Shown here: positions 1-33,948 of the stretch, piece by piece
Numbering within the stretch: position 1 is the stretch's first letter
Layout of the letters: the number at the start of each line of letters is the position of its first letter
The notes under the pieces: model-generated
The model's database searches: none
What the model saw: the letters and a program-made list of their open reading frames with translations, nothing else
What the model was told of the DNA's origin: nothing
Made by a program: the position numbers and the translations under genes
Origin: Oikopleura dioica
Lineage: Eukaryota > Animalia > Chordata
Direction of reading: 5' to 3'
Assembly (NCBI GenBank): GCA_907165135.1
Contig: OU015568.1
Span: 2,542,001-2,606,000 of the forward strand
Length of the DNA: 64,000 bases

Positions 1-610
1 ACTCTTTCTTATGAAACTTAAATTTTCGCCCAGTTCTGACGGATGAATTCATTCAAAAAATACAACTTTTTTCATCCTTTTTTCCGAAAAATCGAAGAGA
101 GTTTTTTCGGTCAAGAAATTTTCTTGAATGATTTTTTGCCTGAACTTTTTGATGCATGAGCGCCGATAATAAAAAAAAGGATCGGCGAAGAAATCGGCCG
201 GAAGGTTGACACCTCGTGATGAGGGTTATAAAGCCGCGCTGATTGAAATTATAGCACTTCATTTTCGCTTCCGAAAAAGGTTAACTGATTTTTCATCAAG
301 ATTTCCGGTTTTTTCTGCCCTTATAAAAAATCACGATGATGAAAGAGACAAGTTAGTGTGTCGATTGTTTATTGTCATTTTTATAAGCTTGAAGCGAATA
401 AGCCAGTAGTCAAAAGATACAGTTGAGTATGAACAGTAGAATTTCGTTTTTGAAGAAATATCAGTTTTATTTATTTATTAGCTTTAAATATACATTCTTT
501 TTATTTATTATTATGTTGAACTTGATGAATATTTTTGAAGCTAAGGCACAGTAGAAGTTGATTAGATTCTAGATCTTTACAGTTATTAATTTTACAATTA
601 TCCTTTTAAA

Positions 611-3600
611 TTAGAATGCGTACGATTTAACATGAGATGCCTCTAATTCTGGACTGCTTGCATCTTCGGGCAGTTTTCTCATTTTTGGTGAACGTATTGA
701 GGAAACACGCAAACTTCCTTCTCGGATCATTTGACCGGGCTTGTTGTCAGATGCAGCTGGTAAAAGGGTTTCAAACTTGTCGAGAAAAGAAGCCATTCCC
801 TATCAAAATGAAGCTTTCTCTCGCAGAACAAATTTTTCTGCCGAAAATCTGTCATAAATCAAGTCAAAAATGAGAAAAAATTGAAACCCGTGGCGAAAGC
901 GAAGGAACTTTGAGTCTTGTGCATCGATCTTCTGGAATGTCTTCTCGTCGATCCTCTTGAAAAATTCGATTCTTCAACCTCCAGCTTCTGCTTTTTAATC
1001 GTCGCCTTTTCTTTTATCTGAGCGTCCAAAGCCTTTAGAACTCGTTACACACTCTTTCTTTGGGTTGCATTACCTTATCTTGCACAGATTTGTAGTACGA
1101 AAGCTGGACGAATCTCCAAGCCAAGACGAAGATCAAATAGATCGCCAGAACGAGGAAAATCACGAGCCATGGAGAAATGACTCCCCAGACATGAGGAGAG
1201 ACGCCAATGAGTTTGAATGTGTCGATTGAGAGAGCGTAAGCACCTGAAGTTGACGATCTTTATTTCGAAAATTATTCTTCCATACCTTTGGAGTAGTACA
1301 TTCCAGAGAAAACAAAGTATGCGACCGCAGAGCCCAAAATCGCTGAAAAATCAAAACAAAGTCAAAAAATCAATTCCTTACCAGCAACATTCAAGATTGT
1401 CCAATTCTTCGTATCAAAGCACATTTGAAGCGTCATCACGAGAACAATTCCCGTTTGCATCGTGACTTGAAAAACGTTGATGTCCATTGGGTCACCGGCT
1501 GGTTCTTCCATTTCTTCGAGGCAGAAATACGAGACAAAGAAGAAAAAGACAGAGATGGCAAGTCCCCGGCCAAGGATGAACCAGAATCGTGACATGTTGA
1601 AAAGAGAATCATTTTGGCCTTGAAAGAAGAAAGTTAACAGAAAACCATATTTATGAAAAATTTTTTTTATACTCAGTCTTTTTTAAAAAACGAAAATCTG
1701 AGTCTTTATGTTTAACTTGAACCAGGTTTATCGAAATCATTCCATTTATTTCTCTTATGAATCTTTATTCTCGCAAAAGTCAAAAATAAACCTATTTCTT
1801 ACCAAGAGTATAAAGCTTCGGATTCTTGAGCGAGCTTCGTTCATTAACATCTTTGTCCATAATCGCCAAGATCAGCACCGGAATGGACGTATACACGACA
1901 TTATACGAAGCAATCATCATATCTTCATACACACTTTGAGCAGACCACAAGCAAAAGATTCCAAACCAAAATTGACAGAAAGTGAAAGCAAAGTTTTTGA
2001 CCAAAAAGTAGTCAAGAAAGATGGCCATTCGATAGTACGAGTAGCGGCCGTGGATGAGAAGGAGTCGCTCCAAATAGCGAAATTGACCAAAGGAGAAATC
2101 GGATGCGAGGACAGCTTGGGTTCCTTCAAGACCGGTTATTCCTGTCATCGGGTTAAAAAACGATTAATGGGAGATTTCAAAACAACCTCTAAAAATAATT
2201 TTGCTATTTTCAACAAACATTTTTCCATGATTTCAACCCACAATCCTATTCCCAAATGCGCTTCTTTAATCATCGACACATCATTCGCTCCATCTCCAAT
2301 CGCCAAAGTGATGCATTTTTCTGCCTCTTTCACCATCGCTACAACTTGAGCCTTTTGAAGCGGAGTGACTCGGCAGCAAATGACACTTTTGCATTTTCTG
2401 GAAACATCGAGGAATAAATCATGATGGTCCGAAATCGCGAATCCGAGGGCTTGGCCGGTTATGACCAGGCCATAATCGCCGTGTCCAGAGTCCAGTTCTT
2501 TCTTCATTTGATCGAGGGTTGTTTTCACTTCTTCTGTGGTCTCCTCCGAGACTTCGAAGACGTTTGTCATTTCATTCGCAAGCAAATTGCATGAATAACC
2601 AATGTTTATTGCAGTTTCCAATTTATCCCCCGTCAGGACCCAAAGTTTAATTCCCGCCAGAAGAATTTGCTTGATAGTCTCAGGAACGCCATCTTGTAGC
2701 TTATCCTCAATGGCAGTAACACCAGCAAGGATCAGATCAGACTCGAGCTCTTCATGAACAACAGAGATTTTTTCATCACGATTTTCCATAGATGTTGCAG
2801 CTTCGTGATACTTTTCGTGCCAGTTTTGCCACTCGTTTTCGCTCAAATTTTTGTACCCGAGGCAAAGAGTTCTCAACCCATCTTCAGCAAATCGAGTCAG
2901 GGCTTCATCAGTCCCTTTTCGGACATTTTCATTCGTCGATTTCGTCAGATTTGAGAGAACAGTACTGTCAGCTCCTTTTGTGTAAACAATAATTTGACCG
3001 CCACCATTTCCTTCTCGGATAACAACGGACATTCGCTTCCTTACATTGTCGAAATCCGCGATATGGAGCACCTCGTACGTCATTGTTTCATCCAGCCGAG
3101 AAACCTGAATTGTATCAGTAGTTCTGTTCGTGAAGACAAAGCCAAAAGCGCGTGCTGCTGAAACTAAGGCTCCCTCATCTGGTGATTGTGCTTGATAAAC
3201 CATGCTTTTTGGACTACCCACTCCGTCAAGATCCACTTCTGTATACTCCGGCATAACAGTATGATTCAAGGCCAGTATTTTCAAAAAGCGGTCGACGTGC
3301 TCGTTTCCTTTTTTAAAATCATCGATCAAGCTCTGATCCGTGAAAGTAAACTCGCCATTATGATGCCTGTTCCATGAAAAATCAACTGGCCGTGAACCAT
3401 TACCGTAGATTCGCCCGCCGATATAAGCTTTTTTAAACTCCATGATATTCTGCGTCAGTGTTCCGGTTTTGTCTGAAAAGATGTAGCTCACTTGACCAAG
3501 CTCTTCGTTAAGTGTTGTTGATCGAGCACTTGCGGGAGTGTCGTTCTTCTCGTAGTACATTCCTCGGTCCCAGTTGATGAACATACTTTGTCCGAGCCGG

Positions 3601-28337: not shown

Positions 28338-31045
28338 TTAATTTGCAGAGGAAGTAACTTTTGGAATAAGAGTAAGGGTGTATGCTTCTTCCAAGAGATA
28401 CCATTCTTCATATTGAATTTCACCCGATACAAGGTCAGAAGGATCAAAGAATGGTTTGAATTTTGAGATCCGAATTACTAATTTATCGTTAACGTGACCT
28501 GAATTAAAAGATATAACCTGGAGAGTCAATTAAAAACTGATTGTTTTGGAGAACGTATTCATTGTTTTCGACTCGATCCATTGTCATCTGATGATAAAAA
28601 ACATTTCTATGTGGAGATTCTTTTTCTGGGTCGAATACATAAGCAGCCGTTGCAGTTACTGGTCGAGCAAATGTGAAGTTTTTATTCAATATAACTTAGT
28701 TCTATTGAGTCACTTTTTATTTTTTAGGCTACCTTTCTCATAAATGCATGTTGACTCAATCGGTTTCGGATTTGCAGGGCCGCCAAGAAGTCTTATTATA
28801 TCCCAGCCACTTTCCATCAGATAAGTTTTTTGACAAAGACGCTGGAGTAGAATTTCAATTTGACAAAGAGCAACGGACTGAATATCCTGTTCTTCTTCAT
28901 TCGGGTTTAAATTTAGCCCAACCATACTTCGAGGATAAACAACCATTAAAATAGTTGACAGAATATCTTCAAACGAATGAGTTTCATATTTATCAATAAA
29001 ACAAAGATCATTTTTCATCGCGTGACGAAGAAGCGAACAAACAGAAATCGGAACACAAAGTTGACTATTTTTCTGGTCTATGATATTTTTGGTTAGATTT
29101 TTCATATCTCCATGAATGTGTTTTGTGAAGTTTTGCTTCAAATTCGACATTTGTAAGGATTTTGTCAAATTTGGATCGTCAAGACAGAATGACGAATCGG
29201 CATCTTCAAGTGAAATGATTTTTTTAATTTCGGCAAAAATGTCGAAATGCCAATTCTTGATTTCATTTATTGAAAAACCGTTGCAGCCCTGAATTCAAGA
29301 TATCTGAATCAAAAAACAGACCTGCTCTAAGTACAAGTATTTTAAACTTACTTTCACGATTAAGTCAATTCGACTTCTCTCTTCATCACTTATTGGCTTA
29401 TATAGCAGAGTCCATGTTGTTCTCCAGCTACAGAAAAGAAAATACCAGAAATTTTCTACATTGTACCCAGCTCCAGTTGTAAATTGACCTTGATAAGAAA
29501 ACCCAGGCGACCCAGCAGCTATGAACGTCAAACAATTTATAATAACTTCTTAACCTTACGACGACAAAATGAAATTTCACCCGCCGACGACAAATGTGCC
29601 ATATATGGCACATGTGCGAAATAATCTGTTTTGATGTTCAAAAATTGACATTTTATGTTATCTTTCTGAATTTAAGACATTTCAGGCTTTATGGCATCAT
29701 TTGACATCAAATAACATGTGGTCGGTGTCAGCAATGATTATGGCCCTTTTGTGAGAGAGAATTACGCACAATGCTTTTGCGGCAGGAAAAAGTCCCACCG
29801 ACGACAAATATGCCAAATATGGCACATCGCAATACATTCTTGTGCCATATATGGCACACGACTAGCGAAGCTAAATTCGCCTTTTTGACATATTTGTAGC
29901 GAACCTAACCCAACCAAAGGTCTACCAAGTGAAAGTTTAGCGAAAAGTAGGGCCTTAAAGGGGGGTCGGTGAAATTCCTTCACCACGATAAATATGAGTT
30001 ACGGGCATCTGAAAGCCTTTGTGCCATATATGGCACACTTGTCGTCGTAAGGTTAACTTACATAGTGAGTTATTCCATCGATATTTTGAACCACTGCGCG
30101 TGTAGCCCATTTTTCTGTAGCCAATGTTACCGGTTTGTTCGCTAACGAGGCCGAAATCAATTATTTTTGGAGTTTCATCAAGCATGAGAATATTTTCCAA
30201 TTTTAAATCGAAATGATACATTCCAATACTGCGCAAATAATTAAGACCCATTAAAATCCCCCAGCCAATATTTTTACGCGTCTCAAGTGTGATCGTTTCG
30301 TATCTCAACAGGACTCTCAAGTCAACTTCGGCTCTTTCCATAATTGTGATCCACCCGAGACAGTCCGATTTTTGTTCATCCTTTTTGTGGTAGAGTTCTA
30401 TATTTGAATAGTTATGTATCACGTTTCTATGGATCGGAATCGAAATAACATTTTCTTTTCTCTTTTCTTTTTCAGCGCGAGCAAAATCTTAGAATATTGA
30501 AAAATTTAATGAGCCTTGAATTTCAGACCTTTCGAAAGATGAATATTGTATGCAATCATTTTAGAATCAAAGAACTCTGTAAAAAGAAAAGGGTCAAAAG
30601 GCTGAACCCTCACAGCTGTTCTTAAATGGCCGAAATCGACACCAAAAATGATCGCTTCTCCTCCAGAAGATAAAATCTCAAAGTCTTCCGATAGCTCCCA
30701 CTGGCCCCCTTCTTCTTGTATTTCCCATCGACTGATATCTTTGCCCAACAAAGTTTTATCAGCTTCCAATATCATCTTTTGAGTAATGTTTATTTGAAAA
30801 TTTTCCAGCTCTTGTCGCCCAAGATGAAGAATATATCCACGATCACCATCAAAGCAAAAATAATTCCAGTGAAAAGCATTGTCGTCATCGTCAAAATCCA
30901 TTCGTTCGATAGCTGAGATCAACCTACATTTCTGCGTCCTCGTTGTTGTTCTTTTGAGTTTTGGCAAAAATCCACCGAGCCATTGTTCTATTTTATGTTT
31001 CGCTAATTCAGGCGTAAAGGTCTCGTTTTTCTTTGTTGATTTCAT
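28338..31045 (-). CDS. Divergent protein kinase with a C-terminal papain-like (Cys-His-Asn) domain
   Basis: Kinase motifs LSSGGEAII, TAVRV, WITIMERAE, HFDLKLENILM, KIIDFGL and SAGSPGF. The C-terminal part has DQKNSQLCVPIS and FYHQMTMDRVENNEYVLQN. Confidence 0.85.
29554..30052. mobile_element. piggyBac-like MITE inside a kinase intron
   Basis: Perfect 14-bp TIR CCTTACGACGACAA / TTGTCGTCGTAAGG. TTAA at 29550-29553 and 30053-30056. Internal repeats of the palindrome GTGCCATATATGGCAC. Confidence 0.88.
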
Positions 31046-31406
31046 TTTAATGATTTGGTTCACAAAACGAGCTCTCTACGATTCTTCAAAGTTAAATGAG
31101 AAATCCGAATGTTAACCAGTTTAAATTTGTTTGACCTGAAATATTTACACAGACATAATAAAAATCACGCTAACTTAAAATTTTATGTTTGAATTGACGC
31201 ATTTTTAGGTCCGTGTAGACACAAAAGTCTTCAGATAAAGTTTAAACGCATCACACTTCTGTTTAAATTATTCGCCTTGAAAGCGTTAAAAGTTCATCTC
31301 TTGCCGAATCTTGACCTAACATTTTATTGCCGAGAAAAAAAATATTGACTTCACACATTTAATTTACTGCAAAAATTACACCTTCTATGTCAAAGTGAAA
31401 ATTAAA

Positions 31407-33948
31407 ATGAGATGGCTACTACTTCATTTTAATTTATTCCTTTTATCCTTCGCGGATTATTGCGATCCAGAGAAATGCCCCAATCTAGGTTCTTTACTTT
31501 CTTGTGGCGTGGTTCTAAGTGAGGTCGAGGTTGATGGAGAACTAAAGCCGAAATGCGGCTATTTTACGACAGGCTTCAGAGCGCGTTTCAATGAAATTCG
31601 CGATTTTTGCCAGACGATTTCGGAAGAAACAATCAACCCGATGGATGATTCGCCTGGGGCTGGAACTGGAAACATCGTCTCCTTCAAAAACCTGCAAGAA
31701 AACGAACGAGTGTATTATCATGTTCGAAACGTAACTGGAATAGCCCCTGATTATACCGTCTTTCCATATGGCTACCCGTATATTGGCTTGAGAAAAAACT
31801 GCGAGGACTGTCCTCATTTCTGGCAAGATGGCTCTGTTTTCAGCTTTACGAACTGGTACGACAATGAGCCCAGAATGGTTGAGTACTACAATTGTGGGCA
31901 AATTCAAGGACAGAGATTCAAAATAATATTTTCCGAAAATTTTTTTTAAGAGAAATGTTAAAAAAATTTTCAATTTTCAATAATTTTTTAATCTTCGATA
32001 GTGAGTGGTAATTTTAATGGAAGATGGCGAAACACTATTTGTTCTGGAAATTACCCTGGCTATTGCGAATATTTCCCAAAAGGTCGCCCTGAGCCGCTGA
32101 AAGTACCAAATTTCCCCGATTCCATCCCATTCGGAGGGTGCAAGCCTGGGTGGTGGCGATTCGGTGGCTTTTGCTACAAAGAGTTCGGCATTTCTTCAAA
32201 TTTTTGGGATCCAAGTAGCTTCAAAAATTTCGCAGATGCAAATGCTAGCTGCAATGCGGAGTGGGAAGGCGCAACTTTGGCTCGAGTTCCAACAAGTCAG
32301 CACAACTCGGTCGTGGCTTCCCTTCTTGGTCCATTAAAAAGTGGGTATTCGCCATGGATCGGCATTTCTACTTTTACTTATGCAGAGTACAATTTCGCCC
32401 AAATCAACGGAGACAGGTTGATCTACTCCAATTGGATGCCTCACCACCCAAATCACCTTCAAAATGGACTCGAAGACTGTGTCGAATTAAAATGGTCGAC
32501 TGAATTTTCATATTTCGGTGTCTCTCGCCTCGGGCAATGGGAAAATCGCCCCTGTACAGAGGAAAAACCTTACGTCTGCTCACATGAAGAAAGTGGAGAA
32601 TTTCAAACATACGAGTATCCTGATGATTATGTATACCCGGAAGCAGGAGTGGAATGTGCAGAGAGCTGGTTGCCAAAAGAATATGGCTGCTACAAAATCT
32701 TCTTGGAAGAGAAGAGCTTCAATGATGCGAATAAATACTGTAGTGATGAGGTGAAGCAGCGAATGCCAAATGCAAACGGAAGTCTCGTTACATTCTGGGA
32801 TGACTACGAGCAGAACCTCGCTTTCTCATTCTTTCGGGACGATACTGTACCCGCTCGAGATGAAATAAAATTAGAAACTACTTTCTCAAAAGGAATCTGG
32901 GTTGGGATGACGAAACAACGACAGGGCTACTTTCGCGACTGGCGCTGGGTGGATTTTTGGCCTATCGAGGGAACTCAGTGGGCCATCGGCAGACCTGAAA
33001 AAGGCAATTCAACGAGCAGAAAGGAATGTGCGTATTTGACAAAAGACAACACTGTTTACGACGAAGATTGTAATGAAAAGATGCCGTTCATTTGCAAAGC
33101 CGCATTTGGCAACAATTCATATCACTGGGGTGGCGTTTCGGAGGCTCTTGGAGAAAAACTAGGATGTGATGATGGATGGTCGAATTTTGGCGATCATTGT
33201 TTCAAAGGATTTACAGTAAGCTCGGAGAAGGTTTTCTATTTCACAAATTTTATAGGAGCAGATGACGTGGCAAGACGCTAGAAAATCATGCGTTGCTCAA
33301 GGTGCAGATTTGCCTTCTATTCATTCGAGATATTCTAACAACAGAATTCAGCAAATTTACAGGTAAAACACATTGATGGAGTATGAGATTCTTATTTTAG
33401 AAACTTGACAATTCTTGACGAAAACGAGTCTGGCCCCTGGATTGGTCTTATCACTTACCCAAGCTACACCTGGGTCGACAACACCGGCCTGTCTTACGTA
33501 AACTGGGCATATGGAGAGCCAAATAACATCAATGGGGGAGAAGCGTGTGGCCAAATGTACCAAACAGGATCATGGAACGATGAGAATTGCGATTACCAGC
33601 ATCCTTACATTTGCCAAAAAATAGCTACTTATGAAAACTGCGTTTATGCAAAAGCCTCGACGAATGGGTTTCCTGAACAAGTGGGACCGGCTGGAATCAA
33701 CGAAGTCGAGTGCGTCTTTGAGTACAATGCCTGTTGGGATCCCTTCAATCCGGTAAAATGTTTCAAGGAACGGTTTGAGAAAAAAAAAAATTTTATGAAA
33801 GAATTCTCGTTCAAACTTCAAAAAGCCAGTAAAACAAAAAGAATCGCTTCATCCTGGAATCACCGCAGGAGCGGCAGTTGGAGCAACTCTCGCTGTTCTC
33901 GCCGCAGTTGGTGGAGGATACTACTATTACAAGAATTTCTACTACTGA
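31407..33948 (+). CDS. Type I membrane receptor with four C-type lectin domains (mannose-receptor-like)
   Basis: Signal peptide and four CTLDs with WIGL/WIGI/WVGM cores and W-x(3-4)-P loops. The fourth has NWAYGEPNN...WND..C. A Cys segment and a TM (ITAGAAVGATLAVLAAVGGG) follow, then a short Tyr-rich tail. Confidence 0.9.

What the first reader, a model, noticed from the sequence alone, without database searches (positions are those of the whole stretch)
28338..31045. Kinase fused to a papain-like Cys-His-Asn domain
Seen: after an atypical kinase (HFDLKLEN and DFG intact, beta-3 Lys apparently replaced by Arg in TAVRV, APE replaced by AGSPGF) there is a ~300-aa domain. It carries D-Q-K-N-S-Q-L-C-V-P-I-S (~29045-29080) and F-Y-H-Q-M-T-M-D...E-Y-V-L-Q-N (~28545-28600). 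Known: clan CA/papain enzymes have Gln-x5-Cys followed by a helix, and His on a beta-strand followed by Y-W-x-x-K-N. Inference: this is a cytosolic, signal-less kinase-protease (or deubiquitinase/acyltransferase) fusion, possibly a lineage-specific defence or signalling module. I know of no characterised chordate equivalent.
Basis: partly seen in the sequence, partly recalled or inferred. Interest (0 to 1): 0.75.

Follow-up and report, generated by a model that had tools for sequence, protein, structure and literature searches.

The report
Kinase fused to papain-fold protease
This Oikopleura dioica gene joins an unusual protein-kinase domain to a very divergent papain-type cysteine-protease domain in one chain; this copy looks intact and belongs to an undescribed family of about a hundred copies whose function is unknown.

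Summary
On the minus strand, 28338-31045 carries a six-exon gene with five GT-AG introns and a 1983-nt reading frame (660 codons).

- **Kinase:** exon 2 passes Pfam Pkinase. In paralogues the catalytic Asp, Lys, Asn and DFG are invariant, but the beta-3 Lys is always Arg and APE is lost.
- **C-terminal domain:** it matches no Pfam family or PDB sequence. An AlphaFold model of an intronless paralogue (pLDDT 80, pTM 0.71) gives papain-fold cysteine peptidases as all 50 best structural matches (Der p 1 Z 9.8, cathepsin B, C39 domains).
- **Catalytic residues:** Gln, Cys, His and Asn are near-invariant. Cys opens a long helix and His and Asn sit on a beta-hairpin, as in papain.
- **Fusion:** it is family-wide. 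At least 86 loci exist in this genome, and some have kinase and Cys motif in one uninterrupted frame.

Named public relatives are all uncharacterised O. dioica proteins. Divergent metagenomic relatives keep the architecture with a canonical kinase.

Enzyme activity, the transcript and any defence role remain untested. This scan had already found the same family in four other windows of this genome. Exons were searched apart, never joined.

The parts
30529..31045 (-). Exon 1. It holds the start ATG at 31045-31043, a family-specific N-terminal region of about 125 aa, and the kinase N-lobe: glycine loop SGGEAIIFG at 30667-30641 and beta-3 TAVRV at 30619-30605, with Arg in place of Lys.
   Evidence: GGEA is 24/24 and the Arg 25/25 in paralogues. 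No Pfam family matches.
30488..30528 (-). Intron 1: 41 nt, GT-AG, phase 1.
30062..30487 (-). Exon 2, the kinase core. It holds the IPIHRNVI strand, the hinge DCLGWITIME, the catalytic loop HFDLKLEN at 30215-30192, DFG at 30158-30150, and the activation-segment motif MGYTRSGSKY.
   Evidence: Pfam Pkinase 1.5e-12, 47.9 bits, above the gathering score. The Asp, Lys, Asn and DFG are invariant in 29-31 paralogues.
29519..30061 (-). Intron 2: 543 nt, GT-AG, phase 1, lying inside the kinase activation segment. Its size comes from a transposon insertion.
   Evidence: The matching intron in paralogue L021 is only about 40 nt and is read through in frame.
29554..30052 (.). A 499-bp miniature transposon inside intron 2. 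Its perfect terminal inverted repeats are CCTTACGACGACAA, it is flanked by TTAA on both sides (29550-29553 and 30053-30056), and it holds the internal palindrome TGTGCCATATATGGCACA three times.
   Evidence: One search shows an 18-nt arm, TTAA included, that is 100% complementary. One search shows 80 matches in the genome, with full-length copies at 75-79% identity.
29352..29518 (-). Exon 3, the kinase C-lobe. It holds the P+1 loop AGSPGF at 29516-29499, followed by SYQGQ where APE would be, and the helix FCSWRTTWTLLYKPI.
   Evidence: The metagenomic relative reads GTPGFASPEQ at the same place.
29289..29351 (-). Intron 3: 63 nt, GT-AG, phase 0.
28733..29288 (-). Exon 4. It holds the conserved linker CLDDPNLTKS and the helical half of the papain-fold domain: oxyanion Gln at 29075-29073, nucleophile Cys at 29057-29055 in QKNSQLCVP, and the PRS..GLNLNP and GW motifs.
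   Evidence: There are 133 matches in the own genome. In the model the Cys is the first residue of helix 66-82.
28695..28732 (-). Intron 4: 38 nt, GT-AG, phase 1.
28518..28694 (-). Exon 5, the beta half of the papain-fold domain. It holds RPVTAT, His at 28593-28591 in FYHQMTMD (with Asp at 28578-28576), and Asn at 28545-28543 in EYVLQN.
   Evidence: In the model the His lies in strand 183-195 and the Asn follows strand 200-204.
28478..28517 (-). Intron 5: 40 nt, GT-AG, phase 1. Paralogues have an intron at the same position.
   Evidence: L002, L006 and L009 have 41-45-nt GT-AG introns there, and L003 has a GA-AG one.
28338..28477 (-). Exon 6, the last strands of the domain (IRISKF...WYLLEEAYTLTL), ending in the TAA stop at 28340-28338.
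   Evidence: The WYL.P.A motif is conserved.

Best explanation
The gene at 28338-31045 (minus strand) appears to be an intact member of a family of at least 86 loci in Oikopleura dioica. It encodes a cytosolic protein of about 660 aa with three parts:
- a family-specific N-terminal region;
- a very divergent eukaryotic protein-kinase domain;
- a C-terminal papain-fold thiol hydrolase domain of about 230-285 aa, with the residues Gln, Cys, His and Asn in papain order.

**Shown:** the gene model, the kinase homology, the papain fold (predicted on a paralogue), the near-invariance of the catalytic residues of both domains, and that the fusion is family-wide and lies in one open frame in some paralogues.

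**Inferred:**
- The C-terminal domain is an active cysteine peptidase or isopeptidase using Cys/His/Asn with a Gln oxyanion hole (about 0.6).
- The kinase domain still binds nucleotide. It keeps the catalytic Asp, Lys, Asn and DFG, but has beta-3 Arg for Lys and has lost APE. It therefore acts as a weak or atypical kinase, or as a regulatory or substrate-recruiting pseudokinase that controls the protease in cis (active kinase about 0.4).
- The conserved linker CLDDPNLT(K/Q)S just before the protease core may be a pro-region-like or self-processing segment. Confidence in this is low.

A canonical kinase (Lys, SPE) in divergent metagenomic relatives indicates that the Arg and APE-less state arose secondarily in O. 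dioica.
For: **Gene model:**

**Kinase:**
- Pfam Pkinase 1.5e-12 on exon 2.
- A profile of the paralogues hits TTK and DAPK at about 1e-11 across the catalytic loop to DFG.
- Conservation: GGEA 24/24, Arg 25/25, HxD Asp 31/31, Lys 30/30, Asn 30/30, DFG 29/29.

**Protease domain:**
- The second AlphaFold model has pLDDT 80.2 and pTM 0.71, and helix 66-82 starts at the Cys.
- VIA gives 16 hits at Z of 8 or more, and all top 50 are papain-fold enzymes aligned over model residues about 53-283. The best are Der p 1 (Z 9.8, 151 aa, 3.1 A), Der f 1, xylellain, cathepsin B and the PCAT1 C39 domain (Z 8.5).
- The top Foldseek matches are mostly the same fold, although each is weak on its own.
- Protein language-model neighbours are C39-like and Mac-1 clusters.
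- Conservation: Q 54/54, C 55/57, H 65/68, N 61/68.

**Family and fusion:**
- Exon 4 has 133 matches in the genome.
- Every fetched locus with enough flank has the N-terminal, kinase and protease parts in the same order.
- ORFs of 635 and 634 aa run from the N-terminus through the kinase to the Cys motif, and 381- and 404-aa frames run from the activation segment to the C-terminus.
- Metagenomic contigs L049 and L050 carry the same architecture at about 25-30% identity.
Against: - No activity, expression or transcript data exist for this copy.
- The structure is a prediction for a paralogue that is 46-49% identical. It is not the window's own protein, because the exons were not joined.
- The Cys-His distance could not be measured.
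- Individual Foldseek E-values are weak (0.016 at best), and no Pfam or PDB sequence match supports the protease domain.
- A Lys-to-Arg change at beta-3 is the classic kinase-dead substitution, and the APE Glu is lost, so the kinase may be catalytically dead.
- A 499-bp transposon enlarges intron 2 from about 40 to 543 nt and could impair splicing.
- Two of 57 family rows have Ser for the nucleophile Cys.
Confidence: 0.75

Rival explanations
1. The C-terminal domain is a papain-fold enzyme but not a conventional protease. It could be a deubiquitinase or UBL-specific isopeptidase, an acyl- or amidotransferase, a deamidase or a transglutaminase-type enzyme, and it would act on substrates brought in by the kinase-like domain.
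For: All these activities share the same fold and the same Cys/His/Asn-or-Asp chemistry. UfSP (Z 7.5), ZUFSP (Z 6.6-7.0), Atg4 (Z 6.3), a viral tegument-like DUB, a Josephin clippase and phytochelatin synthase all appear among the structural matches. The protein is cytosolic and lacks a signal peptide, as DUBs do.
Against: The best structural matches are C1 and C39 peptidases at Z 8-9.8. The His...Asn hairpin with H-x-(V/M)...(F/Y)-x-(I/L)-(K/Q)-N-(S/T) is closest to the C1 pattern, most clearly in the divergent members (HAVTLYFEDQNEFVIKNSD). The fold alone cannot decide between these activities.
Confidence: 0.3
2. Both domains are catalytically dead. The protein would be a scaffold or decoy (pseudokinase plus pseudoprotease), and the conserved residues would be kept only for ligand binding or folding.
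For: The beta-3 Lys is Arg in 25/25 paralogues and APE is lost. The sequences are extremely divergent from any known kinase or peptidase. A few members carry Ser for Cys.
Against: The four protease residues and the four kinase catalytic residues are near-invariant across paralogues that are only 35-60% identical. That pattern is hard to explain without catalysis or at least nucleotide or substrate binding.
Confidence: 0.15
3. This particular copy is a non-functional allele or pseudogene. The transposon in intron 2, or unseen regulatory decay, would silence it, as other agents reported for other copies.
For: A 499-bp TTAA-flanked transposon lies in intron 2, within the activation-segment coding region. 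The closest paralogue, L002, has in-frame stops. Earlier notes on this genome describe transposon-broken copies.
Against: The reading frame is complete and all five introns have GT-AG ends and consistent phases. Every conserved motif of both domains is present. The insertion is wholly intronic, and removing it with one TTAA leaves a normal 40-nt intron.
Confidence: 0.15
4. The family is part of a mobile element or is of viral origin rather than a host gene family.
For: The copy number is high, and copies cluster near the ends of large contigs, for example C1 16.1-16.6 Mb and C2 11.6-12.7 Mb.
Against: Copies are only 35-69% identical at the protein level and share intron positions. The neighbours of the window's copy are unrelated; a C-type lectin gene lies next door. 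There is no strong match among predicted viral structures, the best being E 3.5e-3. No terminal repeats surround the gene.
Confidence: 0.03

Closest known systems
Papain family C1 cysteine peptidases (Der p 1, Der f 1, cathepsin B, caricain, xylellain)
   Same: They give the best structural matches: Z 9.3-9.8, about 150 aligned residues, rmsd 3.1-4.0 A. They share the residue order Gln-x5-Cys at a helix N-terminus, then His and Asn on a beta-hairpin about 18 residues apart. The domain size is similar, about 230 aa.
   Different: There is no Pfam Peptidase_C1 match even at E of 10 or less and only 8-14% identity. The sequence shows no signal peptide and no I29-type propeptide. It has QN(S/T) instead of NSW, and its own motifs (PRS..G.NLNP, GW, RP.TVT, WYL.P.A). 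It is cytosolic and fused behind a kinase.
Peptidase C39 / C39-like double-glycine processing domains (PCAT1, ComA)
   Same: The structural match is Z 8.0-8.5 and covers 126 of 135-151 target residues. The protein language-model neighbours are C39-like clusters. The Gln-Cys-His order is shared.
   Different: C39 uses Asp as the third residue, is about 130-150 aa long, and sits at the N-terminus of ABC exporters. There is no Pfam match here.
Plant EDR1/CTR1 Raf-like kinases with an N-terminal EDR1 domain (PF14381)
   Same: This is the one described case of a papain-like-fold domain commonly fused to a protein-kinase domain (PMC10318531), and it acts in disease resistance and ethylene signalling.
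   Different: The domain order is reversed (papain-like domain first, kinase last). The EDR1 domain groups with the C71/C93 transglutaminase-like branch. There is no PF14381 match here. These are plant proteins, not animal ones, with a canonical TKL kinase.
KSR-type pseudokinases (recalled from memory, not tested here)
   Same: The beta-3 Lys is replaced by Arg while the rest of the catalytic machinery is largely kept.
   Different: The kinase branch is unrelated and there is no protease domain. The comparison is by analogy only.

Membership tests
Papain-like cysteine peptidase fold (clan CA type) | A two-lobe fold, with a helical lobe and a beta lobe, and the nucleophile Cys at the N-terminus of the central helix. 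| tested here: met
   The AlphaFold model of paralogue L028 (pLDDT 80.2, pTM 0.71) has helix 66-82 starting at Cys66. All 50 best VIA matches are papain-fold enzymes, with Z up to 9.8 over model residues about 53-283. This is a prediction on a paralogue, not on the window's own protein.
Papain-like cysteine peptidase fold (clan CA type) | The catalytic residues occur in the order Gln (oxyanion), Cys, His, Asn/Asp and are conserved in the family. | tested here: met
   Q 54/54, C 55/57, H 65/68 and N 61/68 in alignment A3. All four are present in the window copy.
Papain-like cysteine peptidase fold (clan CA type) | The Cys and His side chains are juxtaposed in three dimensions. | not testable with these tools
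   Model coordinates are not exposed. Only the secondary-structure placement could be checked: Cys at a helix start, His and Asn on adjacent strands.
Papain-like cysteine peptidase fold (clan CA type) | Thiol-dependent hydrolytic activity. | not testable with these tools
   This needs recombinant protein and activity-based probes.
Peptidase family C1 (Pfam PF00112) | A sequence match to the family model, plus a signal peptide and a propeptide. | tested here: not met
   There is no PF00112 hit at E of 10 or less in the window's exons or in eight family members. No N-terminal hydrophobic segment is present.
Peptidase C39 / C39_2 (PF03412, PF13529) | A sequence match to the family model. | tested here: not met
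   There is no hit. Only structural resemblance (Z 8.0-8.5) and language-model resemblance were found.
Eukaryotic protein kinase superfamily (PF00069) | A Pfam match above the gathering score. | tested here: met
   Exon 2 scores 47.9 bits against a cut-off of 31.7, E 1.5e-12, covering profile positions 75-156.
Eukaryotic protein kinase superfamily (PF00069) | The catalytic-loop Asp, Lys and Asn, and the DFG Asp. | tested here: met
   HFDLKLEN and DFG are present in the window. In paralogues: D 31/31, K 30/30, N 30/30, DFG 29/29.
Eukaryotic protein kinase superfamily (PF00069) | The beta-3 (VAIK) Lys and the APE Glu of active kinases. | tested here: not met
   Arg is found in 25/25 paralogues where the metagenomic relative has Lys. 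The APE position reads SYQGQ where that relative has SPE.
EDR1 domain-kinase fusions (PF14381 + PF07714) | A match to the EDR1 domain model, with the papain-like domain N-terminal to the kinase. | tested here: not met
   There is no PF14381 hit, and the domain order here is kinase first, then protease.

The most novel reading that the evidence does not exclude
The roughly 100 fast-diverging kinase-protease genes could form a lineage-specific intracellular surveillance or conflict system in an animal reported to have a reduced conventional immune gene set. In this reading the degenerate kinase domain serves as a sensor or decoy, in the way PBS1-type kinases are guarded in plants, and it switches on the attached papain-fold protease as the effector.
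Probability: 0.12. Interest if true: 0.85.

Novelty: new variant of a known kind. Interest (0 to 1): 0.58.

Why it matters
Both folds are well known, and a papain-like domain fused to a kinase has a plant precedent. This combination, however, fits no Pfam family and none of the papers searched describes it: a kinase followed by a C1/C39-like Cys-His-Asn domain.

With at least 86 loci in a 64-Mb genome, it is a sizeable gene family of a model chordate that nobody appears to have studied. It offers three things:
- a new branch of papain-fold enzymes;
- a natural series of kinases caught between a canonical state (metagenomic relatives) and an Arg-for-Lys state;
- a testable case of how a kinase-like module and a protease are coupled in one chain.

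If the family turns out to act in defence or genetic conflict, it would bear on how an animal with a stripped-down genome protects itself.

Tried and rejected
- **Word searches:** searches with the C-domain of paralogue L021 and with the second domain of P0137 found nothing beyond the query. The method was too insensitive here.
- **Sequence searches of the C-domain:** Pfam scans found nothing, and a PDB sequence search with the family profile gave one chance-level hit.
- **First AlphaFold model:** built from 62 rows that were mostly single exons, it had pTM 0.50 and gave only weak matches, Z up to 6.1. It was replaced by a model from a 111-row alignment with more rows spanning both halves.
- **Alignment A2:** it mis-placed the C-terminal fragments and ran to 1190 columns, so it was discarded.
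- **Frameshift or 19-nt intron after exon 5:** rejected. Paralogues show a normal intron at that position, and a 40-nt GT-AG intron restores the frame.
- **Fetching 40 more paralogous loci:** The copy count therefore rests.
- **Viral-contig scan with the alignment:** The viral structure library gave nothing strong.
- **N-terminal 125 aa:** no lead from the protein atlas, score 0.77.
- **Transposon or viral origin of the family:** considered and rejected on divergence, shared introns and unrelated neighbours.
- **Joined protein:** the exons of the window's gene were searched apart by reference. The joined 660-aa product was never assembled, searched or folded.
Full report
**What is in the sequence.** Six open stretches on the minus strand between 31045 and 28338 fit together as one gene.
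- Reading the DNA gives exons 31045-30529, 30487-30062, 29518-29352, 29288-28733, 28694-28518 and 28477-28338.
- The introns are 41, 543, 63, 38 and 40 nt, all GT-AG and with consistent phases. The coding length is 1983 nt, or 660 codons plus TAA.
- An apparent frameshift after exon 5 is really a 40-nt intron. Paralogues L002, L006 and L009 have 41-45-nt GT-AG introns at exactly that codon, and L003 has a GA-AG one.
- The joined protein was never assembled, searched or folded.

**Which genome.** The assembly has 64.28 Mb in 19 contigs. A family member annotated as Oidioi.mRNA.OKI2018_I69.chr2 lies on a contig of 16,158,756 bases, which is the length of contig C5 here. The genome is therefore Oikopleura dioica OKI2018_I69. 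It is not human.

**The kinase half.**
- Exon 2 passes Pfam Pkinase at 47.9 bits against a cut-off of 31.7.
- The domain is very divergent. A single paralogue finds only PLK2 in the PDB, at E 4.8e-4. A 61-row family profile finds TTK and DAPK at about 1e-11, and only across the catalytic loop to DFG.
- In that alignment the glycine-loop GGEA (24/24), the HxD Asp (31/31), the catalytic-loop Lys and Asn (30/30) and DFG (29/29) are invariant. The beta-3 residue is Arg in 25/25 paralogues, and the APE Glu is replaced.
- The Arg truly sits at the Lys position. A divergent metagenomic relative reads GGEAIV...AFKIIPLD and GTPGFASPEQ where this gene reads GGEAII...AVRVQPFD and GSPGFSYQGQ.
- The ancestral fusion therefore probably had a canonical kinase, and the O. 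dioica family carries a derived, possibly weakened or dead, version.

**The C-terminal half.** Exons 4-6 match no Pfam family, and neither do eight other family members at E of 10 or less. A family profile finds no PDB sequence. Because the window's exons may not be joined, I used paralogue L028. It is 46-49% identical to the window's exons 4 and 5, and its domain is one uninterrupted 283-codon frame.
- A first model from 62 rows had pTM 0.50 and gave only weak matches. These were already rich in cysteine peptidases.
- A profile search of 1.84 billion representative proteins returned 242 hits. They added rows that span both halves.
- The second model, from 111 rows, reached pLDDT 80.2 and pTM 0.71.
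- Against 48,161 PDB representatives it gave 16 matches at Z of 8 or more, and all 50 rows listed are papain-fold enzymes. They include Der p 1 (Z 9.8, 151 residues, 3.1 A), Der f 1, xylellain, cathepsins B, C and X, caricain, falcipain and the PCAT1 and ComA C39 domains. Lower down come staphopain, IdeS, UfSP, ZUFSP, Atg4, AvrRpt2 and GtgE. The alignments run from about residue 53 to 283 and so include both the Cys helix and the His strand.
- The top Foldseek matches are mostly the same fold, though each E-value is weak. Protein language-model neighbours are C39-like and Mac-1 clusters.
- In the model the conserved Cys is the first residue of a 17-residue helix, and the Gln lies six residues before it. 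The His lies early in strand 183-195, and the Asn follows the next strand, 18 residues after the His. This is the papain arrangement.
- Conservation is Q 54/54, C 55/57, H 65/68 and N 61/68. The window copy has all four: Gln 29075-29073, Cys 29057-29055, His 28593-28591 and Asn 28545-28543.

**The fusion is real and family-wide.**
- Exon 4 alone has 133 matches in this genome. Of these, 86 have E of 5e-25 or better and most cover the greater part of the exon; only three of the 86 contain a stop.
- Every fetched locus with enough flanking DNA has the N-terminal region, kinase and protease parts in the same order.
- In L021 and L022 a single ORF of 635 or 634 codons runs from the N-terminus through the kinase to beyond the Cys motif. 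In L028 and L027 single frames run from the activation segment to the C-terminus.
RNA evidence for this copy is still missing.
- Copies are 35-69% identical and lie on four large contigs. Clusters lie near C1 5.5-6.0, 14.5-15.8 and 16.1-16.6 Mb and near C2 11.6-12.7 Mb.

**Range and prior knowledge.**
- All named public relatives I looked up are O. dioica proteins called "unnamed protein product", "Uncharacterized protein" or "Protein kinase domain-containing protein".
- Two contigs from one marine metagenome assembly (ERZ508537) carry relatives only about 25-30% identical, with the same order of parts. Their His motif looks even more like papain: HAVTLYFEDQNEFVIKNSD and HAVILFDHDDKTYHFKNSS. 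One of them is a tandem kinase-protease-kinase-protease chain. The source organism is unknown. P0106 found no match at E of 1e-8 or less in this genome.
- Literature searches found no description of the family.
- A 2023 classification of papain-like enzymes notes that the plant EDR1 domain (PF14381) is papain-like and often fused to a kinase (PMC10318531). A kinase plus a papain-fold domain is therefore not without precedent. The order, the branch and the lineage differ, and PF14381 does not match here.
- This scan had already flagged the same family in four other windows of this genome, with the same reading. My tests were run independently of those notes.

**How it probably works.**
- The near-invariance of four protease residues and four kinase residues across such divergent paralogues argues that both pockets are under selection.
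- I take the C-terminal domain to be an active thiol hydrolase (about 0.6), most likely a peptidase or isopeptidase.
- The kinase domain is likely a nucleotide-binding regulatory or recruiting module that may keep weak activity (about 0.4).
- The strongly conserved CLDDPNLT(K/Q)S segment just upstream of the structural core lies outside the papain alignment and is modelled with low confidence. It could be a pro-region-like or self-cleavage element, but this is only an inference.
- A defence or conflict role is suggested only by copy number and divergence.

**State of this copy.** The frame and all motifs are intact. Intron 2 lies within the coding region of the activation segment. It holds a 499-bp TTAA-flanked miniature transposon with perfect 14-nt terminal repeats and many relatives in the genome. 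Removing the element with one TTAA leaves a 40-nt intron. The insertion is intronic and need not harm the gene, but its splicing is untested.

Noticed in passing
window 29550-30056: A 499-bp miniature inverted-repeat transposon lies inside intron 2. It is flanked by a TTAA duplication and has terminal repeats CCTTACGACGACAA. The palindrome TGTGCCATATATGGCACA occurs three times inside it, with a fourth degenerate copy. The TTAA target suggests piggyBac-type mobilisation. The genome holds 80 matches, with full-length copies at 75-79% identity.
   Followed up: partly
L049 (ENA ERZ508537 NODE_12221) 55-3455 and L050 (NODE_17814) 152-2412: Marine-metagenome contigs from an unidentified organism carry relatives that are 25-30% identical and have the same kinase-then-protease order. 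Their kinase is canonical (beta-3 Lys, SPE). One gene is a tandem kinase-protease-kinase-protease chain whose first protease copy has lost the His.
   Followed up: partly
window 31395-33281 (+): The neighbouring gene, transcribed divergently about 350 bp from the kinase-protease start codon, encodes tandem C-type lectin domains (Pfam Lectin_C, 1.9e-24). The two genes may share a promoter region.
   Followed up: partly
L003 about 1240-1310 (G000:C4:9241389-9244946): In this paralogue the intron that matches intron 5 appears to have GA-AG ends instead of GT-AG. This fits the non-canonical introns reported for Oikopleura.
   Followed up: no
L022 3016-3486 (G000:C4:3228012-3234485) and public protein P0006 (CBY13560.1): A few family members have Ser in place of the nucleophile Cys (LSVP instead of LCVP). 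This recalls the Ser-type SERA papain-like proteins.
   Followed up: no
G000 contigs C1 16.1-16.6 Mb and C2 (XSR in the public annotation) 11.6-12.7 Mb: Many family copies cluster near the ends of large contigs, including the X-specific region. No copy was found on C3.
   Followed up: no
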